Positions 13,381 to 40,700 of a stretch of DNA of 54,282 bases are shown here, piece by piece. The notes beneath the pieces are model-generated. The model was not told where the DNA came from and did no database searches. It saw only the letters and a list, made by a program, of their open reading frames with translations. Every line of letters begins with the position of its first letter. The first letter of the stretch is position 1. The position numbers were made by a program, and so were the translations under genes. Origin of the DNA: Macrostomum lignano (lineage: Eukaryota); assembly GCA_002269645.1 (NCBI GenBank), contig NIVC01004220.1, positions 1 to 54,282 on the forward strand, read 5' to 3'.

Positions 13381-14735
13381 CTAGCAATCTTCGCCCTCCA
13401 ATGGGGGACATCTGGATAGAATCTTTGTTCTTTACAAGTAACAAATAGCAAAATAAAGCTTTCAAAAAAACAACAGACATTCCTTCTAAAAAGAAAACAT
13501 CCCAAGAGAGCAAGCATCCCCAGACAGCATGCAAGCATCCCCCAGACCGCAAGCATCCCCTAGATAGCAAGCATCCCCCCGATAGCAAGCATCCCCAGAT
13601 AGCAAGAATCCCCCAATAGTAAGCATATCCTAGATAGCAAGCATTCCCCGATAGCAAGCAACCTCAGATAGCAAGCATCCCTGGAAACAAATAGTCTTTG
13701 TAGATAGCTAGCAAACCCCTCTCAGATAGCAAGTACCCACCACCCCCAAGAGCAAGCATCTCCCAATAGCAAGTTTCAAGTTACCCCAGTAGCAAGCATA
13801 TTTCCAATAGCAAGCATCCCCTTGATAGCAAGTATCTATCCTTAAAAAGCAAACATCCACCAGAGAACAAGTAGCTAGTGCAACAATTTCCATAGCTTTA
13901 TAATGGCTCCATTTTGTTCGACATGACGCTTCCTTTTTTCATTTCAAATTGTGTCTCTTTATGTTTGACATGGTGTCTCTTTTATGTTTGACATGGTGGC
14001 TCTTTAATTTTTGACATGGTGGCTCTTTTATTTTTGACATGGTGTCTTTTATATGATTGACATGGTGGCTCCTTTATGTTTGACATGGTGGCTCTTTAAT
14101 GTTTGACATGGTAACTCTTTTATCTTTGACATGGTAGCTCTTTATTGTTTGAAATGGTGGCTCTTTAATGTTTGACATGGCATCTTTTATATGATTGACA
14201 TGATGGCTCTTTTATGTTTGGCATGGTGGCTCTTTTATGTTTGATTTAATGGTTCTTTCATATTTGACATGGTAGCTCTTTTATGTTTGACATAGAGTCA
14301 CATATATGTTTGACATGGTGGTTCTTTTATGTTTGACATGGTGGCTTTTTAATGTTTGACATGGTGGCTCCTTAATGTTTGACATGGTGGCTCTTTAATG
14401 TTCAACATGGTGGCTCTTTAATGTTTGACATGGAGTCACGTATATGTTTGACATGGAGTCACATATATGTATTATGTTTGAAATGGAGTCATGTATATGT
14501 TTGAAATGGAGTCACATATATGTTTGACATGGAGTCACATATATGTTTGACATGGAGTCACATATATGTTTGACATGGAGTCACGTATATGTTTTACATA
14601 GTGGCTCTTATATGTTTGACATGGTGGGTCTTTTATGTTCGACATGGTGGCTCTTTTATGTTCGACATGGTAGCTCTTTAATGTTTGACATAGTGTCTCT
14701 TTTATGTTTGACATGGTGGCTCTTTTATGTTTAGC
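13381..14735 (-). mobile_element. Helitron-like non-autonomous element carrying two minisatellites (copy 1)
   Basis: Minus-strand 3' end reads GTCCCCCATTGGAGGGC hairpin, 8 nt, CTAG|T. Arrays are GATAGCAAGCATCCCC-type (~13500-13880) and TTTGACATGGTGGCTCTTT-type (~13965-14735). 5' end not identified. Confidence 0.55.
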
Positions 14736-15990
14736 ATTTTGTGTTTTTAAGGTGTTTTAATAAAAAATATTTTGTACTACTAAGATTCAAACCCAGGTCG
14801 TTACATTAGCAGTCCAGTCTGTTCGCATCTAGGGTATCTCTTTTCAACTGGAGAACATGAATTGTAGCCCTTATAATTCAATACTTACAGCAAGCCAGTT
14901 AGAGTAAAAAGTTATGACATAATCAATTTCTCAGTCAGCCAGTATCAGTCCCAATTTAAGTTAGCAATATGGTTACGCAATTTTAATCAAGTCTTGTGCG
15001 CATTTTTTCAACACTGTTTTCAACTTGTTGTGATGTAATTTTTATCAGAATCAAAATTCAGTCAGTCAGTGTTTTTTTCTAGCATTCTTCCAATGCATTT
15101 CAAGTTGAAAATTTAGCTTTACCTTTGCAAAAAAGCATGCTTTTCGAATATTTAATCCCTTTAACATTGAGCAATTTCTTAGCCAAGATGCATGTGTATC
15201 ATCCCAGGAAAATTTCTGATCAAATGGTGCAGGTTGGAAGAAAATCGGTTAAGCCGTTTTTTCTGAAATCTATTGCAAAGCTACATACAAACAACTCATT
15301 TTTTAGGATATAGGATATACAATTTTGACACTTCATTTACCTATTGATTCTGGTTCTAGAATCAGAATTATTCTTTTTCTGGAAATAATATTTGTAAAAA
15401 GCCTAAGGGTATAGGCTGAGCAATGCTGTGTTATCTTTGAGTGGTCATCCATGGATCCACAGATTAAGAAGAAATTCTGGCAACCACTTTGGCTTCTTAA
15501 GCACTTAAGCACAAGTAAATTCTTACATATTTGTATTACACTCAGGTATAGACCTAGAAATTTTTGAAAAGGGGGTGCAGATTACTAAGGTATATGTTAA
15601 TGTATATGTATACAATAGTATATATTTCTATAAAAAAAATTCAAACTTGATGGGGGCACATGCCCTATGTGCCCCCCCTTAAATCTGCTACTGATCCCAA
15701 TTGATTCACTTGGCATCTCCTTTAGGCAGCTATTCCACTCTCCCAGATCTCACAATTGTGTACATAGTTATAAGCATGATGTTTAGCTGCTGTGCCAGAG
15801 TGAAAAAGTCCTTCTTTCAAAGCATGCTTGGGTGCAACCTAGGGATTCACCTAGCTGTGCTATTGGACAGAATAGTAGTCATGTGACTGCTCTCAGCCAA
15901 TAGCAACTTACATGTGTTTATTGCCAATAGGAATGGCCAAGTGATTTCCAAGGTTGAGCATGTATGTTTCAAAGTCTCCAATGAACTGGT

Positions 15991-18061
15991 GTCTATTGCT
16001 ATTATCAATCTTGTTGTATCTATAGGGCTGTTGACCTACACCTTCTGGATTGTCATCTTTATCCTGATATCTTTCTCTGTTCCTTTGCCTGCTGTCAAAT
16101 ATTAAAGAGCCACCATTTCAAACATTAAAGAGCCATCATTACAGACATTAAGGTGCCACTAGGTCAAACATTAAAGAGCAACCATGTCTAACATTAACGA
16201 GTCACCATGTCAAGTATATTCGTGACTCCATGTCAAACATCAAATAGCCATCATACCAAACATTAAAGAGCCACCACATCGAAAATAAAAAAATCCACCA
16301 TGTAGAACATTAAAGAGCCATCATGTCAAACATAAAAGATACACAATTTCAAACATAAAAGTAAGCGTCATGCCAATTTTAAAGGAGCCACTATAGAGCT
16401 AAGGAAATTGTTGCACTAGCTACCTATTGTCTGGTGGATGCTTACTACTTGGGGATGCTTGCTATCTGGTGGATGCTTGCTATCTAGGGGATGCTTGCTA
16501 TCTGGGGATGCTTGCTATCTGGGGGATGCTTGCTATTTGGGGGATGCTTGCAATCTGGGGGATGCTTGCTATCTGGGGGAATATTAAAGAGCCACTATGT
16601 CGAACATTAAAGAGCCACCATGCCAAACATAAAAGAGCCACCATGTCGAACATTAAAGAGCCACCATGCCAAACGTAAAAGAGCCACCATGTAGAACATA
16701 AAAGAGCCACCATGTCGAACATTAAAGAATCATCATGTCAAACATAAAAGAGCCACCATGTCAAAAATTAAAGAGACACCATGTCAGACATTAAAAAAAA
16801 CCGAATCAAACATAAAAGAGCCAAAGGAGCCACAAACATAAAAGAGCCACCATCTCAAACATATATGTGACTCCATGTCAAACATAAAAGAGCCATCATG
16901 TCAAACATTAAAGAGCCACCATGTCGAACATTAAAGAACCATCATGTCTAACATTAAAGAGCTACCATGTCAAACACTAAAGAGCCACCATGTCGAACAT
17001 CAAAGAGCCACCATGTCAAACATAAAAGAGACACCATTTCGAAAATTAAAGAGCAACCATGTCATACATTAAAGAGACACCATGTCAGACATTAAAAAAA
17101 CCCGATTCAAACATAAAAGAGCCACCATGTAGAACATAAAAGAGCCACCATGTCAAACATAAAAAATACACAATTTCAAACTTAAAAGTAAGCGTCATGC
17201 CAATTTTAAAGGAGCCACTATAGAGCTAAGGAAATTGATCACTAGCTACTTATTGTCTGGTGGATGCTTACTATTTGGGGATGCTTGCTATCTGGGGGAT
17301 GCTTGCTATCTGGGGGATGCTTGCTATCTGGGGGAATATTAAAGAGCCACTATGTCGAGCATTAAAGAGCCACCATGTCAACCATAGAAGAGCCACCATG
17401 TCGAACATAAAAGAGCCACCATGTCAAACATAAAAGAGCCACCATGTCAAACATAAAAGAGCCACCATGTCAAACATAAAAGAGCCACCATGCCAAACAT
17501 GAAAGAGCCACCCTGTCGAACATAAAATGCTTGCTATCTGGGGGATGCTTGCTATCCGGGGGATGCTTGCTATCTGGGGGGATGCTTGCTATCTGGGGGA
17601 TGCTTGCTATCTGGGGGATGCTTGCAATCTGGGGGATGCTTGCTATTTGGGGGATGCTTGCAATCTGGGGATGCTTGCTATCTGGGGGATGCTTTGCTAT
17701 TTGGGGGTGCTTGCTATCTGGGGGATGCTTGCTATCTGGGGGATGCTTGCTATTTGGGGGATGCTTGCAATCTGGGGGATGCTTGCTATCTGGGGGATGC
17801 TTGCTGTCTTGGGATGATTTCTTTTTGCATTGCACTTTATTTGAGCAGTTTGTCTGTTGTCTTTGAGAAGGCTTTATCTGGCTCTGGCTGTCTTTTTGTT
17901 ACCTGTAGAGAGCAGAGATTCTATCCAGATGTCCCCCAACGGGGGGCGAAGATTGCTAGTCTATTGCTATTATCAATCTTGTTGTATCTATAGGGCTGTT
18001 GACCTACACCTTCTGGATTGTCATCTTTATCCTGATATCTTTCTCTGTTCCTTTGCCTGCT
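15991..18061 (+). repeat. Identical 103-bp direct repeat pair (15991-16093 and 17959-18061)
   Basis: GTCTATTGCTATTATCAATC...CTTTGCCTGCT read as identical at both positions. Confidence 0.9.
16094..17959 (+). mobile_element. Helitron-like non-autonomous element carrying two minisatellites (copy 2, internally multiplied)
   Basis: 3' end reads GTCCCCCAACGGGGGGC hairpin (17931-17947), GAAGATTG, CTAG|T (17956-17960). AAAGAGCCACCATGTCAAAC and GGGGATGCTTGCTATCT arrays alternate three times. Diverged inverse homolog of copy 1. Confidence 0.6.
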
Positions 18062-18503
18062 CTTTAAATAGCTTGTTTTGCACTTTTTCTATATCTTAAC
18101 TCCAAGCCTCAGCTATTGTGTTTGATTTGAAATGTCTGTCTCTTTTGGTTTTATTCTATCTGACTGAGTTGGGTATAAACTTGCATTTTTAACCATAGAC
18201 AATTTTGGCTGACTGAATAAAAAGGGCTCTGTTGAATATAAAAAGAGTGTCTGTCTTAATTGAATCTCTGTAAGCACTGTGTTTCATAGATAGTGTCTGA
18301 ATTGCAGTTTCAATTGTTTGAATTGAAAGGGAGTTTGGTCAAAAATAGGTGGTAAAATGGTGTAGCACATACTTGCCTTACAAAGGTTTAGCCATAAACA
18401 AAAAGCCTATGTTTGAATTGAAATGGCTCTATATATTGAATTGGCATTTGTTTTTATTGATTTGCCTGCAAGTGGTGCCCTAGTCTAAATTGAAGTTCTA
18501 CTA

Positions 18504-20078
18504 TAGCTTTTGTCATGCTATCTCAGCCTAGGGACATCCAAACTCAGCCAGCCCATCTCGACAGTGTGATTTTTTGGCTCGAGCTAGTCGAGTTTTACCA
18601 TAGACATGCTTCTTAAGGCCATGCTATCTCAGCCCGGGACATGCAATCCCAGCCAATATAGATTTCAATTGCAAACAGATCTCAATGCTATCATCTCTGT
18701 AACGTGACATGAAATGGCAACAAACAGCAATGAATGAACGCAGCAAGAAAAGTCAGTAAGGGTACGCAACAACGGACAAAGTCAGTAAGACGCTCAGTGC
18801 TCAGCCTAGTTGAAAGGCTGCTCTGCGATACACTGCGGGAAGTTCCGATTGCAGTGAATCTCCCATCTGGCCACCTTTAGCGGCGTCACAGCATCTAGCG
18901 CGACTCGGCCCACTCGCTCCAAGAGAATGAGGCGCCAAGCTTCGCAGGTGACCCCATCGGGTCGGCCACCAGCCTCCTCCTCCACCAGTGCAGGGTCAGC
19001 TAGCTGCAGCTTGATCGAGGCCTTCACTGCGCTGTGGGCCATTTCGCAGGGGTTTAGAAAAGGTGAGTAGGCGGGCAACAGATGAAGCTCAAACTGGTGG
19101 CGATGCTGCTCCGGCACTGCCACACCACGGTGAAAGGTAGACAATGACGACTCTGGCATTGCCGATCTGCGGGACAACTTGTTCAACAAGGTCGTTGACG
19201 AAGTGCTGAAATCTCTCCTTCGTCTGGCCTCCCCTGAAAAACTCGCTCTTCACCAGCCCCAAAGCGGAAGACACGGCCAGGCAGATCGAGAGATTTGGAC
19301 CCCTCTGGGTCGGGCATCGGCGCCTCACTGGCTGACCCCGTCGTGACCACCCTTGCGATCTGCGAGTCCACAGGTTGTAACCCGTTTCGTCGATGTAGAC
19401 GACCACCGTGTCCTGTTGCAGTTCGGTCATGAGCAGCGCGTACTCGCGTCTCTTCTCGATCACCCCCTGCGAGTTTGCGCTCAGTCGGATGTCAGTGTTC
19501 TTGGTGGCGATCTTGAACGTGTACAAAGCCCCTTCCAAGGCTCTGGCCAGTGTCTTGATGGTGACAGGCGGCTTGTTGGGAAGCTGGGCACTCAGCTTCG
19601 TGCGCAATGCTTTCAGCGTCGCCAGGGGGTTCGCATCCACGAAAGCAATAAGCGCCTGGCGCATCTCCTCATCGAACTTGCATGAGCCAATCTTTCTTCC
19701 CCCTCGCGGGAGGGCATCCACCCGGCCCGTTGCTTCATAAATCCTGACGATATGTCGAGCTGTCTTCAGATTCATGCGAAGAACTTTGGCGGCCACACGT
19801 AGGTCCTGACCTTCCGTCCACGCAGCAATCAGTCGTCTTCTGTCTTCGTCGCTTGTTGCTCTCATTCTGTTTCATTTGCTTCGATCACAGACTAAGCCAC
19901 AGACAGCTTGACATAGAATCTGAAAAGTGGCTGAGATTGCATGTCCCAGGCTGAGATAGCATGGCCTTAAGAAGCATGTCTATGGTAAAACTTGACTGAC
20001 TTACGTAAAAAATCGCACTGTCGAGATAGGCTGGCTGAGTTTGGATGTCTCTAGGCTGAGATAGCATGACAAATACTA
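18504..20078 (-). mobile_element. IS630/Tc1-type DNA transposon with long IR-DR-type TIRs, 1575 bp
   Basis: ~150-bp TIRs (18504-~18655 and ~19925-20078), each with two copies of CATGCTATCTCAGCC..GGACAT. TA flanks at 18502-18503 and 20079-20080. Encloses a transposase. Confidence 0.9.
18806..19865 (-). pseudogene. Tc1/IS630-like DDE transposase, frameshifted
   Basis: ATG at 19865. HTH-like N-terminus, YIDETG (D1) and YSPFLNPCE (E) are present. A single frameshift at ~19136-19141 (VIVY / TFHRG) lies where the second Asp (DNA motif) is expected. Confidence 0.9.
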
Positions 20079-20211
20079 TAGTTTTTTAGAACTTGAATTT
20101 GATCAAAATTGAACATGAAGAGGTGTAGTAGTAGGCCTATACTAAGACAATTAAATTATATGACTGTTTGAGACTTTGAGTTATGAGCCTATTGCATCTG
20201 CCTTACATTAA

Positions 20212-21488
20212 CAGTAGAACTACCAAGGGGGGGGGGAAAATTCCCCCCCCCCTGACAATTTTTTTTGCTGCACTGGAACGGAGCAACACAGACACACGAA
20301 ATTCAAGAACACGGGCTAACTTTTTGTTGCGCACCTTCTCAAACAAGAATCAAGTCGCCAGCCCTCCGGACCGTCGAGATATTCGACGATTCTGCCAGAA
20401 GGTCGGATTTTTCCCATAAGCGCTAGTGTATTCAGTACACCCCTGTACGCCAATCAGCACTGCGCCTCAGTGCAGCCTTGCCAAGTCTCCAAATTACATC
20501 AGCACGTCGACCACATGTGTCTGCATCAGTTCTGACTTCGTTTGTCACTAGCCTTCACCCAGGTGGAGCTTCTGGACCCTCAACAGCTGTGGCACCAGGT
20601 GACTATGGACACCCTGATGCGGATTTCTCTAGTTTCGCCGATCAAGCCTCGACAGTGGGCAAGAATCAACCGTCAAAAATTCTCAGCTAGTCTCTCAAGC
20701 ATTCCGTCATCATCCCGACGCCGTCGGCACCTTCAACAGATTACACCAGGTGACTATGGACACCCTGATGCTGATTTCTCTAGTTTCGCCGATCAAGCCT
20801 CGACAGTGGGCAAGCCTCAACTTCTGAAAACCCTCAGCTAGTCTCTCGAGCCTTCCGTCACCACCTTGACGCCGTCGGCACCTTCAACAGGTGGCACCAG
20901 GTGACTACGGACATCCTGTTGCAAATATGTTAGATTTTTCTTATCAAGCTTCAATAATGGGCAAACCTCAACCGATGGACATTGTCAGCTAGTTTCTCGA
21001 GCATTCCGTCATCACCCCGATGCCGTCGGCACCTTCAACAGATTACACCAGGTGACTATGGACACCCTGATGCTGATTTCTCTAGTTTCGCCGATCAAGC
21101 CTCGACAGTGGGCAAGAATCAACCGTCAGACATTCTCAGCTAGTCTCTCAAGCATACCGTAATCATCCCGACTTGGAGACTTTGGAGACTTGGCAAGGCT
21201 GCACTGAGGCGCAGTGCTAATTGGCGTACAGGGGTGTACTGAATACACTAGCGCTTATGGGAAAAATCCGACCTTCTGGCAGAATCGTCGAATATCTCGA
21301 CGGTCCGGAGGGCTGGCGACTTGATTCTTGTTTGAGAAGGTGCGCAACAAAAAGTTAGCCCGTGTTCTTGAATTTCGTGTGTCTGTTGCTCCGTTCCAGT
21401 GCAGCAAAAAAAATTGTCAGGAGGGGGGGAATTTCCCCCCCCCCCTTGGTAGTTCGACGGGCGGAAAAATGGCTTGGTATTCCTACTG
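20212..21488. mobile_element. TTAA-flanked MITE with ~270-bp TIRs (piggyBac-like target), 1277 bp
   Basis: TTAA at 20208-20211 and 21489-21492; CAGTAG termini. Near-identical TIRs ~20217-20488 vs ~21182-21455, with the left TIR lacking ~27 bp near its end. No coding capacity. Confidence 0.85.
20590..21180. repeat. 150-bp tandem repeat, ~4 copies, internal to the MITE
   Basis: CACCAGGTGACTA anchors at ~20595, ~20745, ~20896 and ~21046. Confidence 0.9.
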
Positions 21489-21538
21489 TTAACTAAGTCT
21501 ATCTATCTAACTTTGTGCCAATCTTGAAATCTTTCAAG

Positions 21539-21707
21539 CTATATCATTCTATGCCTATTAAAATTTTATATTGCATTTTGCTATATCATTCTATGCCTAT
21601 TAAAATTTTATATTGCATTTTGCTATATCATTCTATGCCTATTAAAATTTTATATTGCATTTTGCTATATCATTCTATGCCTATTAAAATTTTATATTGC
21701 ATTTTGC
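21539..21707. repeat. 42-bp tandem repeat, 4 copies
   Basis: Unit CTATATCATTCTATGCCTATTAAAATTTTATATTGCATTTTG. Confidence 0.95.
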
Positions 21708-22677
21708 ATTAAAAGTTAAAACTATATTGGGTTTTAAAAATGCAAATATTTTAGAATATAAGATGAATGCTAGACCCCTATAAAATAAGTTACTTTTATT
21801 TTTTTAAAGTTGAGTTATGTGATTTGGTGTAAATTAGTTTTGATTGTCTTAAGACATTTTTTGTGATCCTATAGAAAAAAAAGTTTAAATGTAAAATGTC
21901 CTGCATAAAAATTATATCTTTTTGTTTCTTTCTTTATTTGCTAAGAAAAAAATGTTTTTAATAAATATTTGAGATACAAAATGAAACAATAAAAAAATAC
22001 TATCAAAAGGTTGGGCCATGATAATAAAAAATCTTCACAAGAAATAAAAAAAAAATTATTGTGGAGCCATTAAACACTAAAATTTCATTTGAAGGTTAAA
22101 CAGTTATATACTTGTATTTCCTACAAAGCCCTTTGTTTTATAACAGTTTAAATGATTTCATCTATAAGCAATATAAAAGCCATATTTTTTTCACTTTCAG
22201 TGTGAAACACTTCAAAGCTGATTGTTACAATGAATAGGATAACAAACAAAATAGAAACAGTTTTGAAAATTAGAAGTTATTTTATACATTTATTCATATA
22301 CTGAGGAATGATTAGAAACAAGGTAGAAAAAAATATATATTCACCATTTATTTTCTAGCAAAATCATTCCTTGGCAAAAATGAATAATGTCTAATGCATC
22401 TTTACCTTAGTTGATTCCTTCTGGTTAGGGTATTATATTATGAAGTAAAATAAATCTTAAGTCTATGCATATGCATATCATTAAATTAGGTAGTAGCAAT
22501 ATGATCAGAATAAAATTTGATAACTTTAATGTTTGTTAAAATTTGTATTTGTTCTCTACTATAAGTCCCTACTATTGGGACTATGCTGATGCATTTATTG
22601 CCTAATTGTTGCAAATTTTAACCGCTACAACAACCAATAATCAAGCAAGCTCATGAAATAATAATGATCTATTGCAG

Positions 22678-23031
22678 GCATCAAAAGCTGCAGGCAAACT
22701 CACCACAGGCCTTACTGGCCTAGCTGTGAACTCCACGCCGCATATCTCCCTGACCGCTCTGTACGATCGCACCCTCAAGCTGCTGGCTCGCATGCCGGCC
22801 GATGCCAAGTACCGTCAGTCTACCGAGGCCATCGTGAAGGAGCGCCTGGCCGCCGTGAACTCGGAGCCCGACATCAGCCGCCTAGAGAAGCGGATTAACT
22901 GCGGCCAGATTGAAGAAGTTGTACAGCAGGCCGAGCGGGAACTGCAATTGGCTAGAAATTTTCTCGCCTGGAAACCATGGGAACCGCTGATTGGCCAGGC
23001 GCCGCCCAACCAATGGAAATGGCCGCTCTAA
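22678..23031 (+). CDS. NDUFA5: NADH:ubiquinone oxidoreductase subunit A5 (B13); coding exon begins at a splice acceptor with no ATG
   Basis: TTGLTGLAV, YRQSTE, GQIEEV..QAE.EL and WKPWEPL...PPNQWKWPL are typical NDUFA5 motifs. Acceptor TTGCAG at 22672-22677 is in phase 0. An in-frame stop lies upstream with no intervening ATG. Confidence 0.93.
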   Translation, partial: ASKAAGKLTTGLTGLAVNSTPHISLTALYDRTLKLLARMPADAKYRQSTEAIVKERLAAVNSEPDISRLEKRINCGQIEEVVQQAERELQLARNFLAWKPWEPLIGQAPPNQWKWPL

Positions 23032-23729
23032 AGCACGGGTGTCATATATATATATATTATCTAACTATCTACTGAAAAGTGTACCAATGCCTGTGTGAAC
23101 TTACCCCACCTAGACTGTTAGATATGCTTTTGTTAATTTTGCTTCGGAATATTCAGTTATGAGGCTCAACTTCCTCCTCCCGTGTCTCTCCGTAGGGTAA
23201 TATTTAGGCTAAAATTTTCTAGCTTAGAAATATATTAGATAAGAATTGCAGTTTTAATAGGAGGCTCCCATTGTTCGACTGTCAAATATAAACTGACATC
23301 ATTTTGGCTATTATCTGTTCTATTTATTTGTGTGTCAGCAGTTTTAAAACTTTAGCTCAATGTATTTCAGTTATTATATGCTGTAAGTAGGATGGTAAAT
23401 TTATATTACCATCCTACTTATAGTAGTATAGTAGGTGGTTTACGAATACCTAGATCGATAGATTCGTGTTTGAAATCTTTAGGTTGTCATCTATGGAATT
23501 GTCAGCTATGGAATTGCTGTTAAAAGTCTGTAGATTGTCATTTATAACTGTAGATTCGCTGTTGAAATCTGAAGATTGTTATCTAGAACTGTAGATTTGC
23601 TGTTGAAATTTGTCAAGTGTTATGCTAATTAAGTAATATCTCAGTAATAATTTAAACTTTTCTGACCGAAATCATGCCTCACTTTTAGTTGCTATGCAAA
23701 GCTTCGGCGGTGACTCCAGAACGACACTA

Positions 23730-25257
23730 ATGATGAAGCTAATCAGCAGTGTGCCATCCAGTCTTCTGCTGGAGGTGGTCATTCGCATCGCTATGGCTGT
23801 TGTGTTTGCGTGAGTCGTCTATAAAATCAGATTGAGAATGCTACACAGCTTAGGGGTATAATTCCACCAAATGTGCAAGTAGACAGCTACAGATGGCGGG
23901 GGTAGAACTACAGATTGGGTGGGGGTAGAATGCTACATAATCTGGGGGTAGAGTGCTACATAATCTGGGGGTAGAGTGCTACATAATCTGGGGGTAGAGT
24001 GCTACATAATCTGGGGGTAGAGTGCTACATAATCTGGGGGTAGAGTGCTACATAATCTGGGGGTAGAATGCTACATAATCTGGGGGTAGAGTGCTACATA
24101 ATCTGGGGGTAGAGTGCTACATAATCTGGGGGTAGAATGCTACATAATCTGGGGGTAGAGTGCTACATAATCTGGGGGTAGAGTGCTACATAATCTGGGG
24201 GTAGAGTGCTACATAATCTGGGGGTAGGCAGCTACATAATCTGGGGTTAGGCAGCTACATAATCTGGGGTAGACTCCGGTAGAGCGCAGAATTTGTAGGA
24301 AGATTCTGTAGAACTGAAATTCTAATTAAGAATTATTATATTCCCATTCGCAATCCAATGGTAAATTACCTCACCAGATTTTCCCCTGCATCCCCGCGCA
24401 GCCTCCTTCAGCACGTGGCGCCCCGAGATCGCGACATCCATCCCGAGGAGCTGTGGCTCTATCGCAACAAACCCACCGCGCCCTACTTCCCATCCTGGTT
24501 GGTTGTTGTCATGGTGACAGTTGTCGTGCCGACCCTAATGATGCTGTTGCTACAGCAACGGCAGCAGCTGCAGAAACAGCCACAGCTGCTGGACTCGGAA
24601 GGCTCGAGCAGCTCCGGTTGCTCTTCTAGAAGAGCAACAGCCTGTCAGATGATGTTGTTAGGCTACTCGCTCTCTCTCCTGCTCACCGGCCTCATCACTG
24701 ACGCGGTGAAGCTGATAGTTGGCCGGCCGAGACCGGACTTCTTCTATCGCTGCTTCCCATCGGGCGAGGCCAGACTCGTGCCTGCCGCCGCCGAGTCTGG
24801 CGCAGTACCGGACGATGGCGAACCTGCGCCTCAGCAACTGCAGCAGCTTCTGCTTCTAGTGCCGAGCGCTTGCACTGGCGATCCGGACACTGTGGCCGAG
24901 GGCCGGAAATCGTTCCCGTCCGGTCACGCTTCCATGTCATTCGCCAGCCTTGCCTATCTGTCCTTCCTGCTTGCTGATTGGCTTCAACTGTTTAAATCTT
25001 CGGCTCGTTTGGCGCCATCTGTGCGCCTACTGGCCTGCCTGGCGCCCTGCCTTGCAGCCTCCGGCATCGCACTGAGCCGGCTGGTTGACTTCCATCATCA
25101 TCCAGAGGACGTGCTGGCAGGGTCCACGCTGGGACTGTTGGTTGCTTTTGCCTGCCATCGCTGCTACAGGCGGAGAGAGCCGGTCACTGACCCGGCAGCC
25201 AGCGTTGAGACTGGAGAAGCCAGCGGCGACGGGCTCGGGCGAAGGATTGACGTTTGA
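23730..25257 (+). CDS. Phospholipid phosphatase, PLPP4/PLPP5 (PPAPDC1/DPPL)-like; exons 23730-23809 and 24402-25257 (311 aa)
   Basis: PAP2 motifs K..VGRPRPDF, SFPSGH and SR..DFHHHPEDVLAG, plus family-typical IHPEELWLY. GTGAGT donor and CAG acceptor are in matching phase 2. Confidence 0.9.
23925..24270. repeat. 23-bp intronic minisatellite (~14 copies)
   Basis: Unit TCTGGGGGTAGAGTGCTACATAA, degenerate at both edges. Confidence 0.95.
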
Positions 25258-25519
25258 TAGTTGAAACGGTTTAGGAGTCTCGGAAAGCATCACACGGTGT
25301 CTTGACAACAGTAATAACCCTACGGATTGGCTCATTTGCTATTCATAATTTGACCTAGCGCAGTACTTGATATTATTTTTTTTATGGATAAGACTTTATT
25401 GATGGTTACTTTTATAGAGAATTTTCATTATAGAGAAATTTCACATAGTCACTACTATGGACATTTAACTGTCAGTGACAATTGACTTCCAGTAAAATTT
25501 CACTGTCGATGACTTTGTC

Positions 25520-26145
25520 AGTGACATCTTGACTGTCCGTGACATTTGACTTCCAGTGACATTCGAATTTCAGTAACATTTGACTTTCAGTGACATTTGA
25601 TTGTCAGGGACATTTGACTGTCAGGGACATTTGACTGTCAGGGACATTTGACTGTCAGAGACATTTGACTGTCAGGGACATTTGACTGTCAGGGACATTT
25701 GACTGTCAGTGACATTTGACTGTCAGAGACATTTGACTGTCAGGGACATTTGACTGTCAGTGACATTTGACTGTCAGAGACATTTGCCTGTCAGGGACAT
25801 TTGACTGTCAGGGACATTTGACTGTCAGGGACATTTGACTGTCAGTGACATTTGACTGTCAGAGACATTTGCCTGTCAGGGACATTTGACTGTCAGTGAC
25901 ATTTGACTGTCAGAGACATTTGCCTGTCAGGGACATTTGACTGTCAGTGACATTTGACTGTCAGAGACATTTGCCTGTCAGGGACATTTGACTGTCAGTG
26001 ACATTTGACTGTCAGAGACATTTGCCTGTCAGGGACATTTGACTGTCAGAGACATTTGACTGTCAGAGACATTTGCCTGTCAGGGACATTTGACTGTCAG
26101 AGACATTTGACTGTCAGGGACATTTGACTGTCAGTGACATTTGAC
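25520..26145. repeat. 17-bp minisatellite (~35 copies)
   Basis: Unit TCAGGGACATTTGACTG with G/T/A variants. Confidence 0.95.
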
Positions 26146-31739: not shown

Positions 31740-34700
31740 ATGGCGGCCGGATTTGTCGTCGGGATTATGGTGTCGGTCTGGCTGTTGTCAACTGCGGCCG
31801 AGAGGCCGGTGGTGCACACTCTGGTGTTGTGCTCTGAGAACAGCACCCGGAGCGCCGACCCGGAGTACTACAAGTTTGCACTGGACTACTTGAACAACAA
31901 TTTAACCGAATTGAACTTTAGCTTCAAGCTTAAGGCCGAGTACAAATGCGGTCTGGGGGTAAGATATGAGATATGAGATATAAGATGTGAGATAAAAGGT
32001 ATGAGATATGAGATTTGAGATATGAGGCATGAGATATGAGATATGAGGTATGAGATATGAGGTATGACGTATGAGATATGATATGCGATATGAGGTATGA
32101 GATATGAGATGTAAGGTATGAGATATGAGGTATGACATATGAGATATGCGGTATGATATGAGGTATGATATATGAGATATGAGACATGAGGTATGAGATA
32201 TGAGGTATGACATATGAGATATGCGGTATGAGATATGAGGTATGATATATGAGATATGAGACATGAGGTATGAGATATGAGGTATGACGTATGAGATATG
32301 AGGTATGAGATATGATATGAGATATGAGGTATGAGATATGAGATGTAAGGTATGAGATATGAGGTATGACATATGAGATATGCGGTATGAGATATGAGAA
32401 ATGAGATGTAAGGTATGAGATATGAGGTATGACATATGAGAGGGGACGCAAAACAGTTCAGCGGTAAACGCGGCGGCTGGCTGTTGCACAACGACCCCTG
32501 GTTCGATTCCGTGCGCAGCCGCATTCATTTGGTTCTTGTGCAAGAAAAATTGGCAGGGATTTGTCGTCCGATTCAAACTCATGAGGACCAGCCCCCAAGG
32601 CACAGAGAGTGTACCTGCCCGACCGATTAGAAAGTCAAAGGGCTGCTGTACACCCTGCGTGAGCGTGTGTGCGAGTGCTTGTCTCTGTGCAGTATTGGCG
32701 CGCTTGTCGTGTGCTCAGGAGCCAGCGCAATGGGCAGCATTGCCTCATCGTTGCTGTTTTTGGGACGATGATGAATTACTGTAGCGATTCACTTTTTACC
32801 TTCTCTGACCTTGAAACTAAGGACAAACCTGCAAAAAAGCATTTCATTCGAAGTTTTATTAGGACAAGAAAATTGATCCGAAAGAGACTGGCTTCCAATC
32901 TTGCGAGACTATATTATTTTGGTATGAAAACCGGCTTTTAATAAATACTTTTACAGTTTTATAAAAGTAGCATGGCGTAAGTTGACAATTTTGCGTCTAC
33001 TGTTAGTAGGCGAAGACGATATCTTCAATTTAATTTAAGCGAAGCTACTCAACTGATTAAAAACATCTGTTGACACGAATTGATCCCTTCAAGGCGCTGC
33101 AGGGTAGCGCGGTGCGCAAGTTTGCAGACGGCTACCTGACTCCGCCTAACAAGGCGCTGATGTTTGGCCCGGCCTTCTCTAACCAGGCCGTGGTGCTGGC
33201 CAACGTGGCCCAGTACTACTTCCTGCCTGAGGTGCGCGAGGCGGCCGGGATCGGCTGGGGAGGGGAGGCAGAAAAAAGGAAGTGGGATTGATGGTGAGGG
33301 GTGAGAGAAATACGAAGTAGAGGTAGGGAGGCGTGATGAAGAAGGAAGAGAGAGGGAGAGGAGAGAGGCAGAATGACAGAGTGGGGTGGAGAGGGAGAGA
33401 AAGGGGGAGAGAGGGAGGGGAGATGGAGAGGAGCAGGGAGAGGCAAAGAGAGGGAGACAGAGTGAGAAGCGGAGAGGGAGGGAAATAGGGAGAGGGGGAG
33501 AGGGAGAGGAGGGAGCAGGGAGAGGGGGAGGAAGAAGAACAAAGGGAGAGGGTGAGAGGGAGAGGGAGACAGAGTGAGAAGCAGAGAGGTAGAGGCAGAG
33601 GGAGAGGGAGAGGCAGCTGTAATTACAGTCCATCAGTGGCACTGCAGTCAGCCAGCAACAACCCCCTCATTCCCCAACTCAGATCAGCGCCTCAACGCCC
33701 AGTCCGGCGCTGTCGAACAAAGACAAATATTTTTACTTCTCTCGGGTCAGCATGTCGCATAGTCTGTTCCTGGATGGAGTTGTGCAGATTCTGAAGCGCT
33801 ACAATTGGTCTATAGTGGGACTGCTCACTAGCGACTATGACGGAGTTTACGCTGTGAGTTGCTCGTCTATCTGAGTTGATGCCAAACTGACCCGTGTAGG
33901 ACTGCAAATTAGCATGTCCTCGAATAGTTTTCTCTGCCTGTAATGCTTTTGCTTACTTATGTTTACAACAGATTTTGGCTAAGCAGTTTTTCTGTGTACA
34001 TCACCCACCACCTCATTGACTGATATACTCGTAAATATAAATTTTGTTGATTGGGGTGACAGACTGATTCTGAATCAAATACTATTTCTCACCCAGTGCA
34101 TCGTCTTATATCTTAAGTTCGTGTATTCACCCTATTACAACTTCCTACTCTCCCACTCTCTCTACACTCTCTCTACATCCTTCTCTCCACCCTCTCCTAC
34201 ACCCTCCTCTCCACCCTCTCCTACACCCTCCTCTCCACCCTCTCCTACACCCTCCTCTCCACCCTCTCCTACACCCTCCTCTCCACCCTCTCCTACACCC
34301 TCCTCTCCACCCTCTCCTACACCCTCCTCTCCACCCTCTCCTACACCCTCCTCTCCACCCTCTCCTACACCCTCCTCTTCACCCTCTCCTACACCCCCCT
34401 CTACAATCTCTCCTACACCCTCGTCTACACCTCCTACACCCTCCCCTACACACTCTCCTACACCCTCCTTTGCACCTCCTACATCCTCCTCTCCTCCCTC
34501 CTACACCCTTCTCTACACCTCCTACACCCTCCTCTCCACCCTTTTCTACACCCTCTTGTAATGTGGCACTGGCAGTAATATAGTACACTATTTGCATGCA
34601 CAATAAAAATAATAATACAAACGCCTGCAGACATCCGTCCACTTGGAGAAAATGCTGTCACTGTACAACATCACCCTGGCCGCCAGGGGAGTCTACAGTA

Positions 34701-37700: not shown

Positions 37701-40700
37701 GGGGTCCCAAACCACCCCCCAGCCGGGAGTGACGCAAGCAATGATGGCCAGCGCCAGAGCAGAAAACAGGCCGCCCGTGTACAGCTTTTGATAGAGCCTT
37801 GATGCTGTCATTTGCTGTCAGAGAGACGGACAAGTTTATAAACTATTTTATATACTATTTCGAAACTCTAACTTTACTCCATGTCAGCTTAGCTCTTTTA
37901 ATATGCAACTTCTTGAAAACAACTCTCTTCCATAGACTAAAAAAGTGACAATAAATTTAAACATAGAGGTTAGCAATTCTTCAATAATTTTGCTTTGCTT
38001 TGGTTGAGAAACTGATTTTGCAAAAAACACTCATTACAGTCATGCGCTATTAAAGATCATGATATCCAACAATTACCGTACGTTATAAAGCTTACATCTG
38101 TATCCCCATTCCCATCCCCATTCCCATCCTCATTCCCATCCCCATTCCCATCCCCATTCCCATCCCCATTCCCATCTTCATTCCCATCCCCATTCCCATC
38201 CCCATTCCCATCCCCATTCCCATCCCCATTCCCATCCCCATTCCCATCCCAATTTCCATCCCCGTTCCCATTCCCATTCCCATTCCCATTCCCATTCCCA
38301 TTCCCATTCCCATTCCCATTCCCATTCCCATCCCCATTCCCATCCCCATTCCCATCCCCATTCCCATCCCCATTCCCATCCTCATTCCCATCCCCATTCC
38401 CATCCTCATTCCCATCCCCATTCCCATCCCCATTCCCATCCTCATTCCCATCCCCATTTCCATCCCCATTCCCATCCCCATTCCCATCCCCATTCTTATC
38501 CCCATTCCCATCCCCATTCCTATCCCCATTCCCATCCCCATTCCCATCCCCATTCCCATCCCCATTCCCATCCCCATTTCCATCCCCATTCCCATCCCCA
38601 TTCCCATCCCCATTTCCATCCCCATTCCCATCCCCATTCCCATCCCCATTCCCATCCCCATTCCCATCCCCATTCCCATCCTCATTCCCATCCCCATTCC
38701 CATCCCCATTCCCATCCCAATTTCCATCCCCGTTCCCATCCCCATTCCCATTCCCATTCCCATTCCCATCCCCATTCCCATCCTCATTCCCATCCCCATT
38801 CCCATCCCCATTCCCATCCCCATTCCCATCCTCATTCCCATCCCCATTCCCATCCTCATTCCCATCTTCATTCCCATCCCCATTCCCATCTTCATTCCCA
38901 TCCTCATTCCCATCCCAATTTCCATCCCCGTTCCCATCCCCATTCCCATTCCCATTCCCATTCCCATCCCCATTCTCATCCTCATTCCCATCCCCATTCC
39001 CATCCCCATTCCCATCCCCATTCCCATCCTCATTCCCATCCCCATTTCCATCCCCATTCCCATCCCCATTCCCATCCCCATTCCCATCCCCATTCCCATC
39101 CCTATTCCCATCCCTATTCTCATTCCCATCCCTATTCCCATCCCTATTCTCATTCCCATCCCTATTCCCATCCCCATTCCCATCTTTCATCCCATCTCAT
39201 GCTCATCTGTCTGCATTCAGAAATCGCCGATCCCGAATCAGGTGCAAAATCAGTCCCACTACTTACCGTGTCGTCGCAGATCGAGCAGTTCGGCATGGTC
39301 GGCCCTAAGTACTTCTGGATCCAGCTGGGTATGACGCAAACCTTTGACCCGCCCAAGGAACCCGGCCAGTGCGACAGTCCGGACCAGCTGAAGGCCGGGG
39401 CCGAGAACTCCGTGTACTTTAAAGCTGACCTCGTTGTCATTGGCAACGAGACCGGCATGGGTTCTGCGGTGAGCCAGCCTAGATTAGCAATCCATTCTAT
39501 TCCTTCATCAGTGATGCTGGCTAGATTAACAATCCATTCTATTCCTTCATCAGTGATGCTGGCTAGATTAGCAATCCATTCTATTCCTTCATCAGTGATG
39601 TTGGCTAGATTAGCAATCCATTCTATTCCTTCATCAGTGATGCTGGCTAGATCAGCAATCCATTTTTAGGTCAGCGGTCGAGTGTCCTTAAATCTCTACA
39701 TTCGTTTCGCTTTCAGGCCTCCAGAGAGCTGTACCGAGATTTTCTGCAGTCGAATTCTCACCTGGATACCGATACCGTGTCCATCAGCGACCTTGGCGTT
39801 CGAATCGATGCAGTGCTGACAGCTGCTTTGGCTCTGAACCGAACTCTTAGGAAATATGCGTACTCCACGGAGCTCGATCTGGACGAGAGCCCTTTCAAGG
39901 ACCAGCTGCTGAGCGAAATCAGGGCTGTGGACTTTGAGGGCTTCACGGTGCGTTCTGACTGGCCCTTTCGTAGATTTGACAGGCTCTCAGTTGAGCGAGT
40001 CTAACACTCGATTGAGCGAGTCTACCACTCGATTGAGCGAGTCTAACACTCGATTGAGCGAGTCTAACACTCGATTGAGCGAGTCTAACACTCGATTGAG
40101 CGAGTCTTACACTCGATTGAGCGAGTCTAACACTCGATTGAGCGAGTCTAACACTCGATTAGTTGAGTCTAACACTCGATTAGTTGAGTCTAACACTCGA
40201 TTGAGCGAGTCTAACACTCGATTAGTTGAGTCTAACACTCGATTAGTTGAGTCTAACACTCGATTAGTTGAGTCTAACACTCGATTAGTTGAGTCTAACA
40301 CTCGATTGAGCGAGTCTAACACTTGATTGAGCGAGTCTAGCACTTAATTGAGTGAGATTCAGTAACTGTTATTCGATATGCTCCGCAGGGTCGAGTGAAA
40401 CTCGATGGCAACGGTGATCGGCTTGCTAACGCGGTGGTCTACCAGATTCGAAGTTCGTAACTCCACTTTTGTGAATGCTATCATCTCTTTCATCATTTTT
40501 ATTCATCATTGGTTGCAAATTTTTAAACATCATTGCAGACTTTGAGCCGGTGGCTGTGGCCTTTTTCAACACCTATGACAACATTATAGACTGGAGCGAA
40601 GAACTGCAGTTTTCAGGTAAGAGAAATCACACCATGGACAGTGAAAGCAGAATGCTTGAAAGGCATTAACTTTCCAATATAACAAAGGCAGCAACTGAGT

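What the first reader, a model, noticed from the sequence alone, without database searches (positions are those of the whole stretch)
22655..23031. NDUFA5 has no start codon of its own: candidate for a spliced-leader-donated AUG
Seen: the conserved coding sequence begins exactly at a phase-0 acceptor (TTGCAG|GCA TCA AAA). An in-frame stop lies just upstream, and I found no ATG mini-exon in the TE-filled DNA upstream. Adding one ATG gives MASKAAGKLTTGLTGLAV, close to the normal NDUFA5 N-terminus (human MAGVLKKTTGLVGLAV). Known: flatworm spliced leaders end in AUG, which can serve as the initiator. Inference: this essential complex I subunit may depend on trans-splicing for its first codon.
Basis: partly seen in the sequence, partly recalled or inferred. 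Interest (0 to 1): 0.75.

Follow-up and report, generated by a model that had tools for sequence, protein, structure and literature searches.

The report
Flatworm NDUFA5 gene borrowing its start codon
In the flatworm Macrostomum lignano the gene for a small respiratory-chain protein (NDUFA5) lacks a start codon and almost certainly gets one from the short RNA leader spliced onto many of this animal's messages, a mechanism already known in flatworms.

Summary
The window is contig NIVC01004220.1 of the Macrostomum lignano Mlig_3_7 assembly. A single-exon NDUFA5 reading frame (22678-23031, Pfam PF04716, E=5e-26) starts directly after TTGCAG (22672-22677). That hexamer fits the published M. lignano trans-splice acceptor motif [T/C]TNCAG. 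An in-frame TGA lies at 22654-22656, with no in-frame ATG between it and the acceptor.

The first genomic codon (Ala) aligns with residue 2 of animal NDUFA5 proteins, so only the initiator Met is missing. The published M. lignano spliced leader ends in ATG. Joined at 22678, that ATG is the first AUG of the mRNA and is in frame. The next AUG is Met39, inside the conserved domain.

The GenBank gene model is 5'-partial and starts exactly at 22678. The annotation pipeline cut transcripts at sites mapped with leader-bearing reads. Two other genomic copies share the structure and the coding sequence looks constrained (5 synonymous to 2 non-synonymous changes).

No RNA reads could be reached, so trans-splicing at this site is inferred. 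The mechanism has been known since Cheng et al. 2006 in Schistosoma. This is a well-supported new example of a known mechanism.

The parts
22654..22656 (+). In-frame TGA stop, 8 codons upstream of the first NDUFA5 codon. It closes the frame on unspliced RNA.
   Evidence: Conserved in all three genomic copies.
22672..22677 (+). Predicted spliced-leader trans-splice acceptor TTGCAG, with the junction after 22677 in phase 0.
   Evidence: Sequence. It matches the [T/C]TNCAG motif reported at M. lignano trans-splice junctions (PMC8629364). Identical in all three copies. The GenBank CDS starts at 22678.
22678..23031 (+). Complete NDUFA5 (complex I B13 subunit) coding sequence minus the initiator codon: 117 codons plus TAA, with no introns.
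   Evidence: Pfam PF04716 at E=5e-26. PDB NDUFA5 chains at E about 1e-37. Orthologue alignment. 98.0% identical to the homeolog with 5 synonymous and 2 non-synonymous differences.
22792..22794 (+). First genomic in-frame ATG (Met39 of the Met-initiated protein). It is the only fallback start and would remove the conserved N-terminal third of the protein.
   Evidence: the second AUG of the modelled SL+exon mRNA is at nt 150. The Pfam domain spans residues 14-80 of the 117-residue genomic product.
22050..22671 (+). Unique upstream block shared with the homeologous copy. It is the presumed outron and/or proximal promoter, and contains no phase-0 ATG exon with a consensus donor.
   Evidence: Collinear homology with L003 starts at window position about 22050. 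89.6% identity over 620 nt. No other copy in the window. Mini-exon scan. Its function is inferred, not shown.

Best explanation
This is the Macrostomum lignano NDUFA5 gene, which encodes an accessory subunit of mitochondrial complex I, as a single exon without an initiator codon. The primary transcript starts somewhere upstream, at a promoter that was not located. The spliceosome then joins the 35-nt spliced leader, which ends ...UUGCAUG, to the acceptor TTGCAG|G at 22677/22678 and discards the outron with its in-frame UGA. In the mature mRNA the leader's terminal AUG lies 33 nt from the cap, is the first AUG, and is in frame. Translation therefore yields MASKAAGKLTTGLTGLAV..., a full-length 118-residue NDUFA5. 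Shown here: the gene identity, the missing ATG, the acceptor motif and phase, conservation of the arrangement in three copies, sequence constraint, and an annotated 5' end at the acceptor. Taken from the literature: the leader sequence, and the principle that a flatworm leader AUG can start translation. Inferred: that this site is trans-spliced, and that the leader AUG is the start used.
For: The organism and contig are identified. The leader ends in ATG (PMC8629364; PMC5173321; PMC10468722). The acceptor TTGCAG fits the published trans-acceptor motif. The GenBank model is a one-exon CDS starting at 22678. Its homeolog copy PAA89498.1 carries the name 'partial', and the two other copies start 3 nt further in. 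Gene boundaries in that annotation were set from leader-bearing reads (PMC5730564). A neighbouring gene in the same annotation starts at a normal genomic ATG at 31741, so the missing ATG is not a general annotation habit. The first genomic codon aligns with residue 2 of orthologues, and only 7 residues precede the stretch that aligns from residue 6 of the 116-residue mammalian chains, so no coding exon is missing. In the modelled SL+exon mRNA the leader AUG is the first AUG and is in frame, and the next is Met39. All three copies lack an ATG. The CDS is 98.0% identical between homeologs, against 89.6% for the upstream flank, with 5 synonymous and 2 non-synonymous changes. No consensus-donor ATG mini-exon lies in the shared upstream DNA. 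For precedent, in Schistosoma mansoni the leader AUG is in frame in 28% of trans-spliced transcripts and more than 40 cDNAs need it (PMC9851317 citing Cheng et al. 2006; PMC12582326).
Against: No RNA read or cDNA carrying the leader joined to GCATCAAAAG could be retrieved. The exact Met-initiated protein is not on record, a junction search in metagenome contigs found nothing, and the supplementary tables held contain neither the gene id nor 'NDUFA5'. A '5'-partial' flag alone is not diagnostic: the neighbouring PAP2 gene is also given a start without an ATG, at 23667, and that site has no acceptor. The leader AUG has U at position -3, a weak context on my own reading, although +4 is G. A second motif-conforming acceptor, CTGCAG at 22688-22693, would join the leader out of frame.
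Confidence: 0.85

Rival explanations
1. A cis-spliced upstream exon that ends in ATG, or holds ATG plus a few codons, supplies the start. It would be hidden in the repeat-rich DNA and missed by the annotation.
For: The parasitic-flatworm orthologues do have a tiny 6-codon first exon with their own ATG, so mini-exons occur in this gene family. One phase-0 ATG...GTAAGA candidate exists at 18734-18784. With a bare GT as donor there are 8 candidates in the nearest 628 nt.
Against: The deposited RNA-seq-guided models of all three copies have one CDS exon that starts at or 3 nt after the acceptor. The residues that the orthologues' first exon encodes are here contiguous with the rest of the gene, so only ATG is missing. 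No GTRAG-donor candidate lies in the upstream DNA shared with the homeolog. The single distant candidate lies in a transposon insertion absent from the homeolog, and it would add 17 unrelated residues.
Confidence: 0.04
2. Translation does not use a leader AUG. It starts at the internal Met39 (22792), or at a near-cognate codon such as the in-frame TTG at 22672 on an unspliced transcript.
For: TTG at 22672 is in frame and downstream of the TGA. Met39 is the first genomic in-frame ATG.
Against: A Met39 start would remove residues that are invariant across animals (T11, G15, L16, P22, L26, Y30) and about a third of the Pfam domain. The TTG lies inside the acceptor hexamer and would be removed by splicing. 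Near-cognate starts are inefficient in eukaryotes (general knowledge). The orthologue alignment fits M+ASK exactly.
Confidence: 0.04
3. The missing ATG is an artefact or a defect. Either the long-read assembly dropped a T (true sequence TTGCATGGCATCA with a genomic ATG), or these copies are non-functional retrocopies.
For: Restoring one T would create ATG in frame. The gene is intronless whereas parasite orthologues have introns. The 10 nt before the acceptor resemble the leader's tail.
Against: Three separately assembled copies, one about 10% diverged in the flank, all read TTGCAGGCATCA, and the site is not a homopolymer. All copies keep a full open frame with a 5:2 synonymous excess. No other NDUFA5 cluster from this species appeared in the protein search, so these copies are the only candidates for the working gene.
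Confidence: 0.03

Closest known systems
[quoted passage not shown]
   Same: A flatworm leader that ends in AUG is joined in phase to an ORF with no genomic start codon, and the leader supplies Met1. From my own memory, not checked here, the leader's 3' end TTGCATG is the same in both species.
   Different: A different flatworm lineage (free-living Macrostomorpha rather than a trematode). For the Schistosoma set, cDNAs and translation assays exist. Here both the trans-splicing at this site and the initiation are inferred from sequence and annotation.
slORFs: reading frames created by leader-borne start codons in nematodes, Oikopleura and trypanosomes (PMC9851317)
   Same: Trans-splicing changes or creates the start of the translated frame.
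   Different: Those mostly use near-cognate NUG codons and often give alternative or overlapping ORFs. Here a canonical AUG completes the one conserved ORF of a housekeeping gene.
NDUFA5 genes of parasitic flatworms (Echinococcus granulosus, Dicrocoelium dendriticum)
   Same: Orthologous protein at 58-63% identity with the same length class.
   Different: Those genes carry their own genomic ATG in a 6-codon first exon and have introns. The Macrostomum gene is intronless and has no ATG.

Membership tests
NDUFA5 / complex I B13 subunit (Pfam PF04716 ETC_C1_NDUFA5) | Significant match to the family profile above the curated threshold | tested here: met
   90.7 bits against a cut-off of 27, E=5e-26, covering profile positions 1-67 of 67.
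NDUFA5 / complex I B13 subunit (Pfam PF04716 ETC_C1_NDUFA5) | Full-length collinearity with NDUFA5 chains of solved complex I structures, including the C-terminal WKPWEPL...NQWKWP motif | tested here: met
   Query residues 8-118 align to residues 6-116 of the 116-residue mammalian chains at E about 1e-37. Invariant columns are listed.
NDUFA5 / complex I B13 subunit (Pfam PF04716 ETC_C1_NDUFA5) | Assembly into mitochondrial complex I | not testable with these tools
   Would need biochemistry or proteomics.
Flatworm mRNAs initiated at the spliced-leader AUG (Cheng et al. 2006 class) | The organism's spliced leader ends in AUG | tested here: met
   The published M. lignano leader ends ...TTGCATG (PMC8629364; PMC5173321). 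No leader RNA gene lies in this window.
Flatworm mRNAs initiated at the spliced-leader AUG (Cheng et al. 2006 class) | The mRNA is trans-spliced at the acceptor in question | tested here: inconclusive
   Indirect support only: motif match, and a deposited model whose CDS starts at 22678, from a pipeline that uses leader-read peaks. No read or cDNA was retrievable.
Flatworm mRNAs initiated at the spliced-leader AUG (Cheng et al. 2006 class) | The junction puts the leader AUG in frame with the conserved ORF | tested here: met
   Phase-0 junction. The modelled mRNA has the leader AUG at nt 33 in frame 0.
Flatworm mRNAs initiated at the spliced-leader AUG (Cheng et al. 2006 class) | No genomic in-frame AUG is available at or before the conserved N-terminus | tested here: met
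   TGA at 22654-22656 with no ATG before 22678. The first genomic ATG is Met39. The same holds in all three copies.
Flatworm mRNAs initiated at the spliced-leader AUG (Cheng et al. 2006 class) | Translation actually starts at the leader AUG | not testable with these tools
   Needs ribosome profiling, N-terminal proteomics or a reporter assay.

The most novel reading that the evidence does not exclude
The intronless Macrostomum NDUFA5 may be a retrogene copied from an already leader-bearing mRNA. The bases before the acceptor (ATCTATTGCA-G) would then be a relic of the leader's tail (ATTTATTGCATG). Loss of a single T would have turned the relic's ATG into the CAG| acceptor, so that renewed trans-splicing rebuilds exactly the parental mRNA. 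This would resemble the recycling of leader relics that I recall being described in dinoflagellates, a comparison from memory that was not checked here.
Probability: 0.1. Interest if true: 0.55.

Novelty: new member of a known kind. Interest (0 to 1): 0.25.

Why it matters
The case shows, for a conserved housekeeping gene of the respiratory chain, that a free-living flatworm can lose its genomic start codon entirely and rely on trans-splicing to make a translatable message. It has two practical consequences. Gene predictors and GenBank flag such genes as 'partial' although they are complete. Transgenes or knock-ins built from the genomic sequence would need an added ATG. In evolutionary terms it extends leader-AUG dependence, documented in a trematode, to an early-branching flatworm lineage, and fits the view that the conserved terminal AUG of flatworm leaders is kept for this use. 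It does not reveal a new mechanism.

Tried and rejected
- Rfam scan of the whole window found no family at gathering score, so no leader RNA gene is annotated by homology.
- A direct search for the 35-nt leader and its 10-15-nt tail in the window found no leader gene. The three 10-mer near-matches (7925, 30037, and the minus strand at 22661) are chance matches.
- Direct RNA evidence was sought and not found. Exact look-up of the Met-initiated 118-residue protein gave nothing on record. The junction 24-mer was absent from metagenome contigs. The supplements of PMC5816591, PMC5730564 and PMC5173321 contain neither 'Mlig027756' nor 'NDUFA5'. PMC8629364 has no supplements held.
- The Wasik et al. 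2015 paper could not be opened.
- The bacterial promoter/terminator scan does not apply to a eukaryote and was disregarded.
- An operon reading, with NDUFA5 as a downstream gene, was considered. No annotated gene lies within 10 kb upstream in any copy, so there is no evidence for it. The PAP2 gene about 640 nt downstream does not start at an acceptor.
- The retrogene / leader-relic idea was tested. The similarity ranks 3rd of 292 YTNCAG sites in the window, but the comparison was made post hoc, and I saw no poly(A) tract in the 3' flank (read by eye). It is kept only as the speculative reading.

Full report
**Where the window comes from**

The exact product of the reading frame is on record for contig NIVC01004220.1 (54,282 bp, the whole window) of assembly GCA_002269645.1. 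A 90%-identity cluster mate is PAA89498.1, 'hypothetical protein BOX15_Mlig027756g1, partial [Macrostomum lignano]'. [quoted passage not shown]

**The observation**

The sequence reads ...ctcaTGAaataataatgatctaTTGCAG|GCA TCA AAA GCT....

- TTGCAG occupies 22672-22677.
- The frame starting at 22678 runs for 117 codons to TAA at 23029-23031.
- The in-frame codons upstream are CAG, TTG, CTA, GAT, AAT, AAT, AAT, then TGA at 22654-22656.
- The two ATGs nearby (22653, 22664) are out of frame.

The product is NDUFA5:

- It matches Pfam PF04716 over the full profile (E=5e-26, 90.7 bits against a cut-off of 27).
- It matches the NDUFA5/B13 chains of solved mammalian complex I structures at E about 1e-37.
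- It is 60-68% identical to animal NDUFA5 proteins.

In a 17-sequence alignment, Met plus the genomic product is collinear with orthologues from the first to the last residue. The genomic Ala codon falls on residue 2. Only seven residues precede the stretch that aligns from residue 6 of the 116-residue mammalian chains. Nothing but the initiator codon is missing.

**Is there another source of ATG in cis?**

I listed every ATG followed by an open phase-0 stretch that ends at a consensus donor (GT[AG]AG).

- None lies in the 628 nt immediately upstream.
- One lies in the 10 kb upstream, at 18734-18784, and would add 17 unrelated residues.

Comparison with the diverged homeologous copy (L003, NIVC01000150.1) shows collinear homology upstream only back to window position about 22050. 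The 3.85 kb from 18200 to 22049 is an insertion absent from the homeolog. That insertion holds two elements bounded by terminal inverted repeats, at about 18500-20082 and 20208-21492. The first encodes a DDE_3 transposase fragment. The single candidate mini-exon sits inside that insertion, so it cannot be an ancestral part of the gene.

**The spliced leader and the acceptor**

M. lignano has one 35-nt spliced leader, CGGTCTCTTACTGCGAAGACTCAATTTATTGCATG. It is found on about 30% of genes, and the top motif at trans-splice junctions is [T/C]TNCAG placed right at the junction (PMC8629364). The same 3' end was derived independently from k-mers (PMC5173321). The authors of the M. cliftonense and M. 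hystrix genomes note that the final ATG is probably a translation start codon (PMC10468722).

TTGCAG at 22672-22677 fits the motif. In the modelled leader-plus-exon mRNA the terminal ATG is the only ATG contributed by the leader. It lies at nt 33-35 and is in frame with NDUFA5. The next AUG, at nt 150, is Met39. Starting there would remove residues that are invariant across animals and about a third of the Pfam domain.

**Evidence from the deposited annotation**

The GenBank model in the window is one CDS exon that starts at 22678 with no Met (117 residues, starting ASK).

The Mlig_3_7 annotation was built by cutting RNA-seq-assembled transcripts at positions where leader-containing reads map once the leader is trimmed (the TBONE pipeline), followed by TransDecoder (PMC5730564). 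An open frame can be called 5'-partial only if it reaches the transcript's 5' end. Because TGA lies 24 nt upstream, the model's 5' end must lie at the acceptor.

The models of the two other copies start 3 nt further in, at TCA.

A 'partial' flag alone proves little. The PAP2 gene about 640 nt downstream is also given a start without an ATG, at 23667, where there is no acceptor. Its real start is probably the ATG at 23695. The next gene along starts at an ordinary genomic ATG at 31741. What is specific to NDUFA5 is the combination of acceptor motif, upstream stop, phase and N-terminal alignment.

**Is the gene real and under constraint?**

Three genomic copies exist: the window, NIVC01004447.1 and NIVC01000150.1. 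This fits the known duplications in this line (PMC8629364). All three read CTATTGCAG|GCATCA with the TGA conserved.

| Region, window copy against the diverged homeolog | Identity |
|---|---|
| CDS | 98.0% (7 differences: 5 synonymous, 2 non-synonymous) |
| 620 nt upstream | 89.6% |
| About 600 nt downstream | 95.5% |

No other NDUFA5 cluster from this species appeared in the protein search. An assembly error (a dropped T in TTGCATGG) is unlikely, because three separately assembled copies agree and the site is not a homopolymer.

**Comparison with relatives**

Echinococcus granulosus and Dicrocoelium dendriticum NDUFA5 genes carry their own genomic ATG in a 6-codon first exon (ATGCAAGCC...) and have introns. 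The Macrostomum arrangement, intronless and without ATG, is therefore not shared with these parasitic flatworms.

**Mechanism and what is known**

The best explanation is that the leader is trans-spliced to 22678 and its terminal AUG starts translation of a full-length NDUFA5 (confidence 0.85).

This is the mechanism shown for Schistosoma mansoni by Cheng et al. 2006. [quoted passage not shown] All reported flatworm leaders keep the 3' ATG (PMC12582326). I found no paper in the searchable library that quantifies this use in Macrostomum or names NDUFA5. The case is therefore a new member of a known kind.

**A side observation**

The ten bases before the acceptor's G (ATCTATTGCA) match the leader's tail (ATTTATTGCA-TG) at 9 of 10 positions. 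The genomic junction differs from leader+exon by one substitution and one missing T. Among 292 YTNCAG sites in the window, only 3 score as high, this site included.

Together with the loss of all introns, this permits a speculative reading: a retrocopy of a leader-bearing mRNA whose relic ATG lost its T and became the acceptor. The comparison was made post hoc, and I saw no poly(A) tract in the 3' flank (read by eye). I give this reading about 10%.

**What could not be done**

No RNA reads, cDNA or proteomic data for this species were reachable. Trans-splicing at this exact site and initiation at the leader AUG therefore remain inferences. A search of the public RNA-seq runs for the junction sequence would settle the first, and N-terminal proteomics or ribosome profiling the second.

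Noticed in passing
window 22667-22677: The bases just before the acceptor (ATCTATTGCA-G) resemble the 3' tail of the M. lignano spliced leader (ATTTATTGCATG): 9 of 10 matches plus one missing T. The site ranks 3rd of 292 YTNCAG sites in the window. This may be chance, or a relic of a leader-bearing retrocopy.
   Followed up: partly
window 22688-22693: A second motif-conforming acceptor, CTGCAG|GCA, lies 16 nt inside the coding sequence. Trans-splicing there would put the leader AUG out of frame (MANSPQALLA-stop). It may be a competing, non-productive site.
   Followed up: no
window 18200-22049: A 3.85-kb insertion relative to the homeologous copy, only 628 nt upstream of NDUFA5. It holds two elements bounded by terminal inverted repeats. 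One, at about 18500-20082, has a DDE_3 (Tc1/mariner-like) transposase ORF at 19089-19865 on the minus strand. The other, at about 20208-21492, has roughly 280-bp inverted ends (two adjoining arm pairs) and internal 151-bp tandem repeats.
   Followed up: partly
window 23667-25257: The downstream PAP2 (phosphatidic acid phosphatase family) gene is annotated from 23667 without an ATG. The likely real start is ATG at 23695, preceded by a short upstream ORF (ATG at 23674, stop at 23686). Its first intron carries a 23-bp tandem array (23920-24273, 15 copies, 96% matches).
   Followed up: partly
window 23372-23430: A palindrome (gtaggatggtaaatttatattaccatcctac) lies in the NDUFA5 3' flank, next to 41-bp tandem repeats at 23516-23623. 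It could be a small inverted-repeat element or a 3'-end structure.
   Followed up: no
window 13500-17800 and 25459-26145: Several satellite arrays: 23-bp units (13951-14732, 16583-17186) that appear in both orientations, 18-bp units (16430-16580, 17527-17813), and a 17-bp array of about 40 copies (25459-26145).
   Followed up: no
window 38001-40000: A strong composition anomaly (GC skew -0.59, GC 52%) coincides with two overlapping long minus-strand ORFs (38057-39190 and 38092-39183). One has a short TrAA12-like Pfam match (E=4e-18, residues 315-366).
   Followed up: no
L005 3001-3510 (Echinococcus granulosus) and L004 3001-3110 (Dicrocoelium dendriticum): Parasitic-flatworm NDUFA5 genes start with a 6-codon mini-exon carrying a genomic ATG. 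The deposited E. granulosus protein (120 aa) appears to include a few intron-derived residues (IIFVQ) at the first intron.
   Followed up: partly
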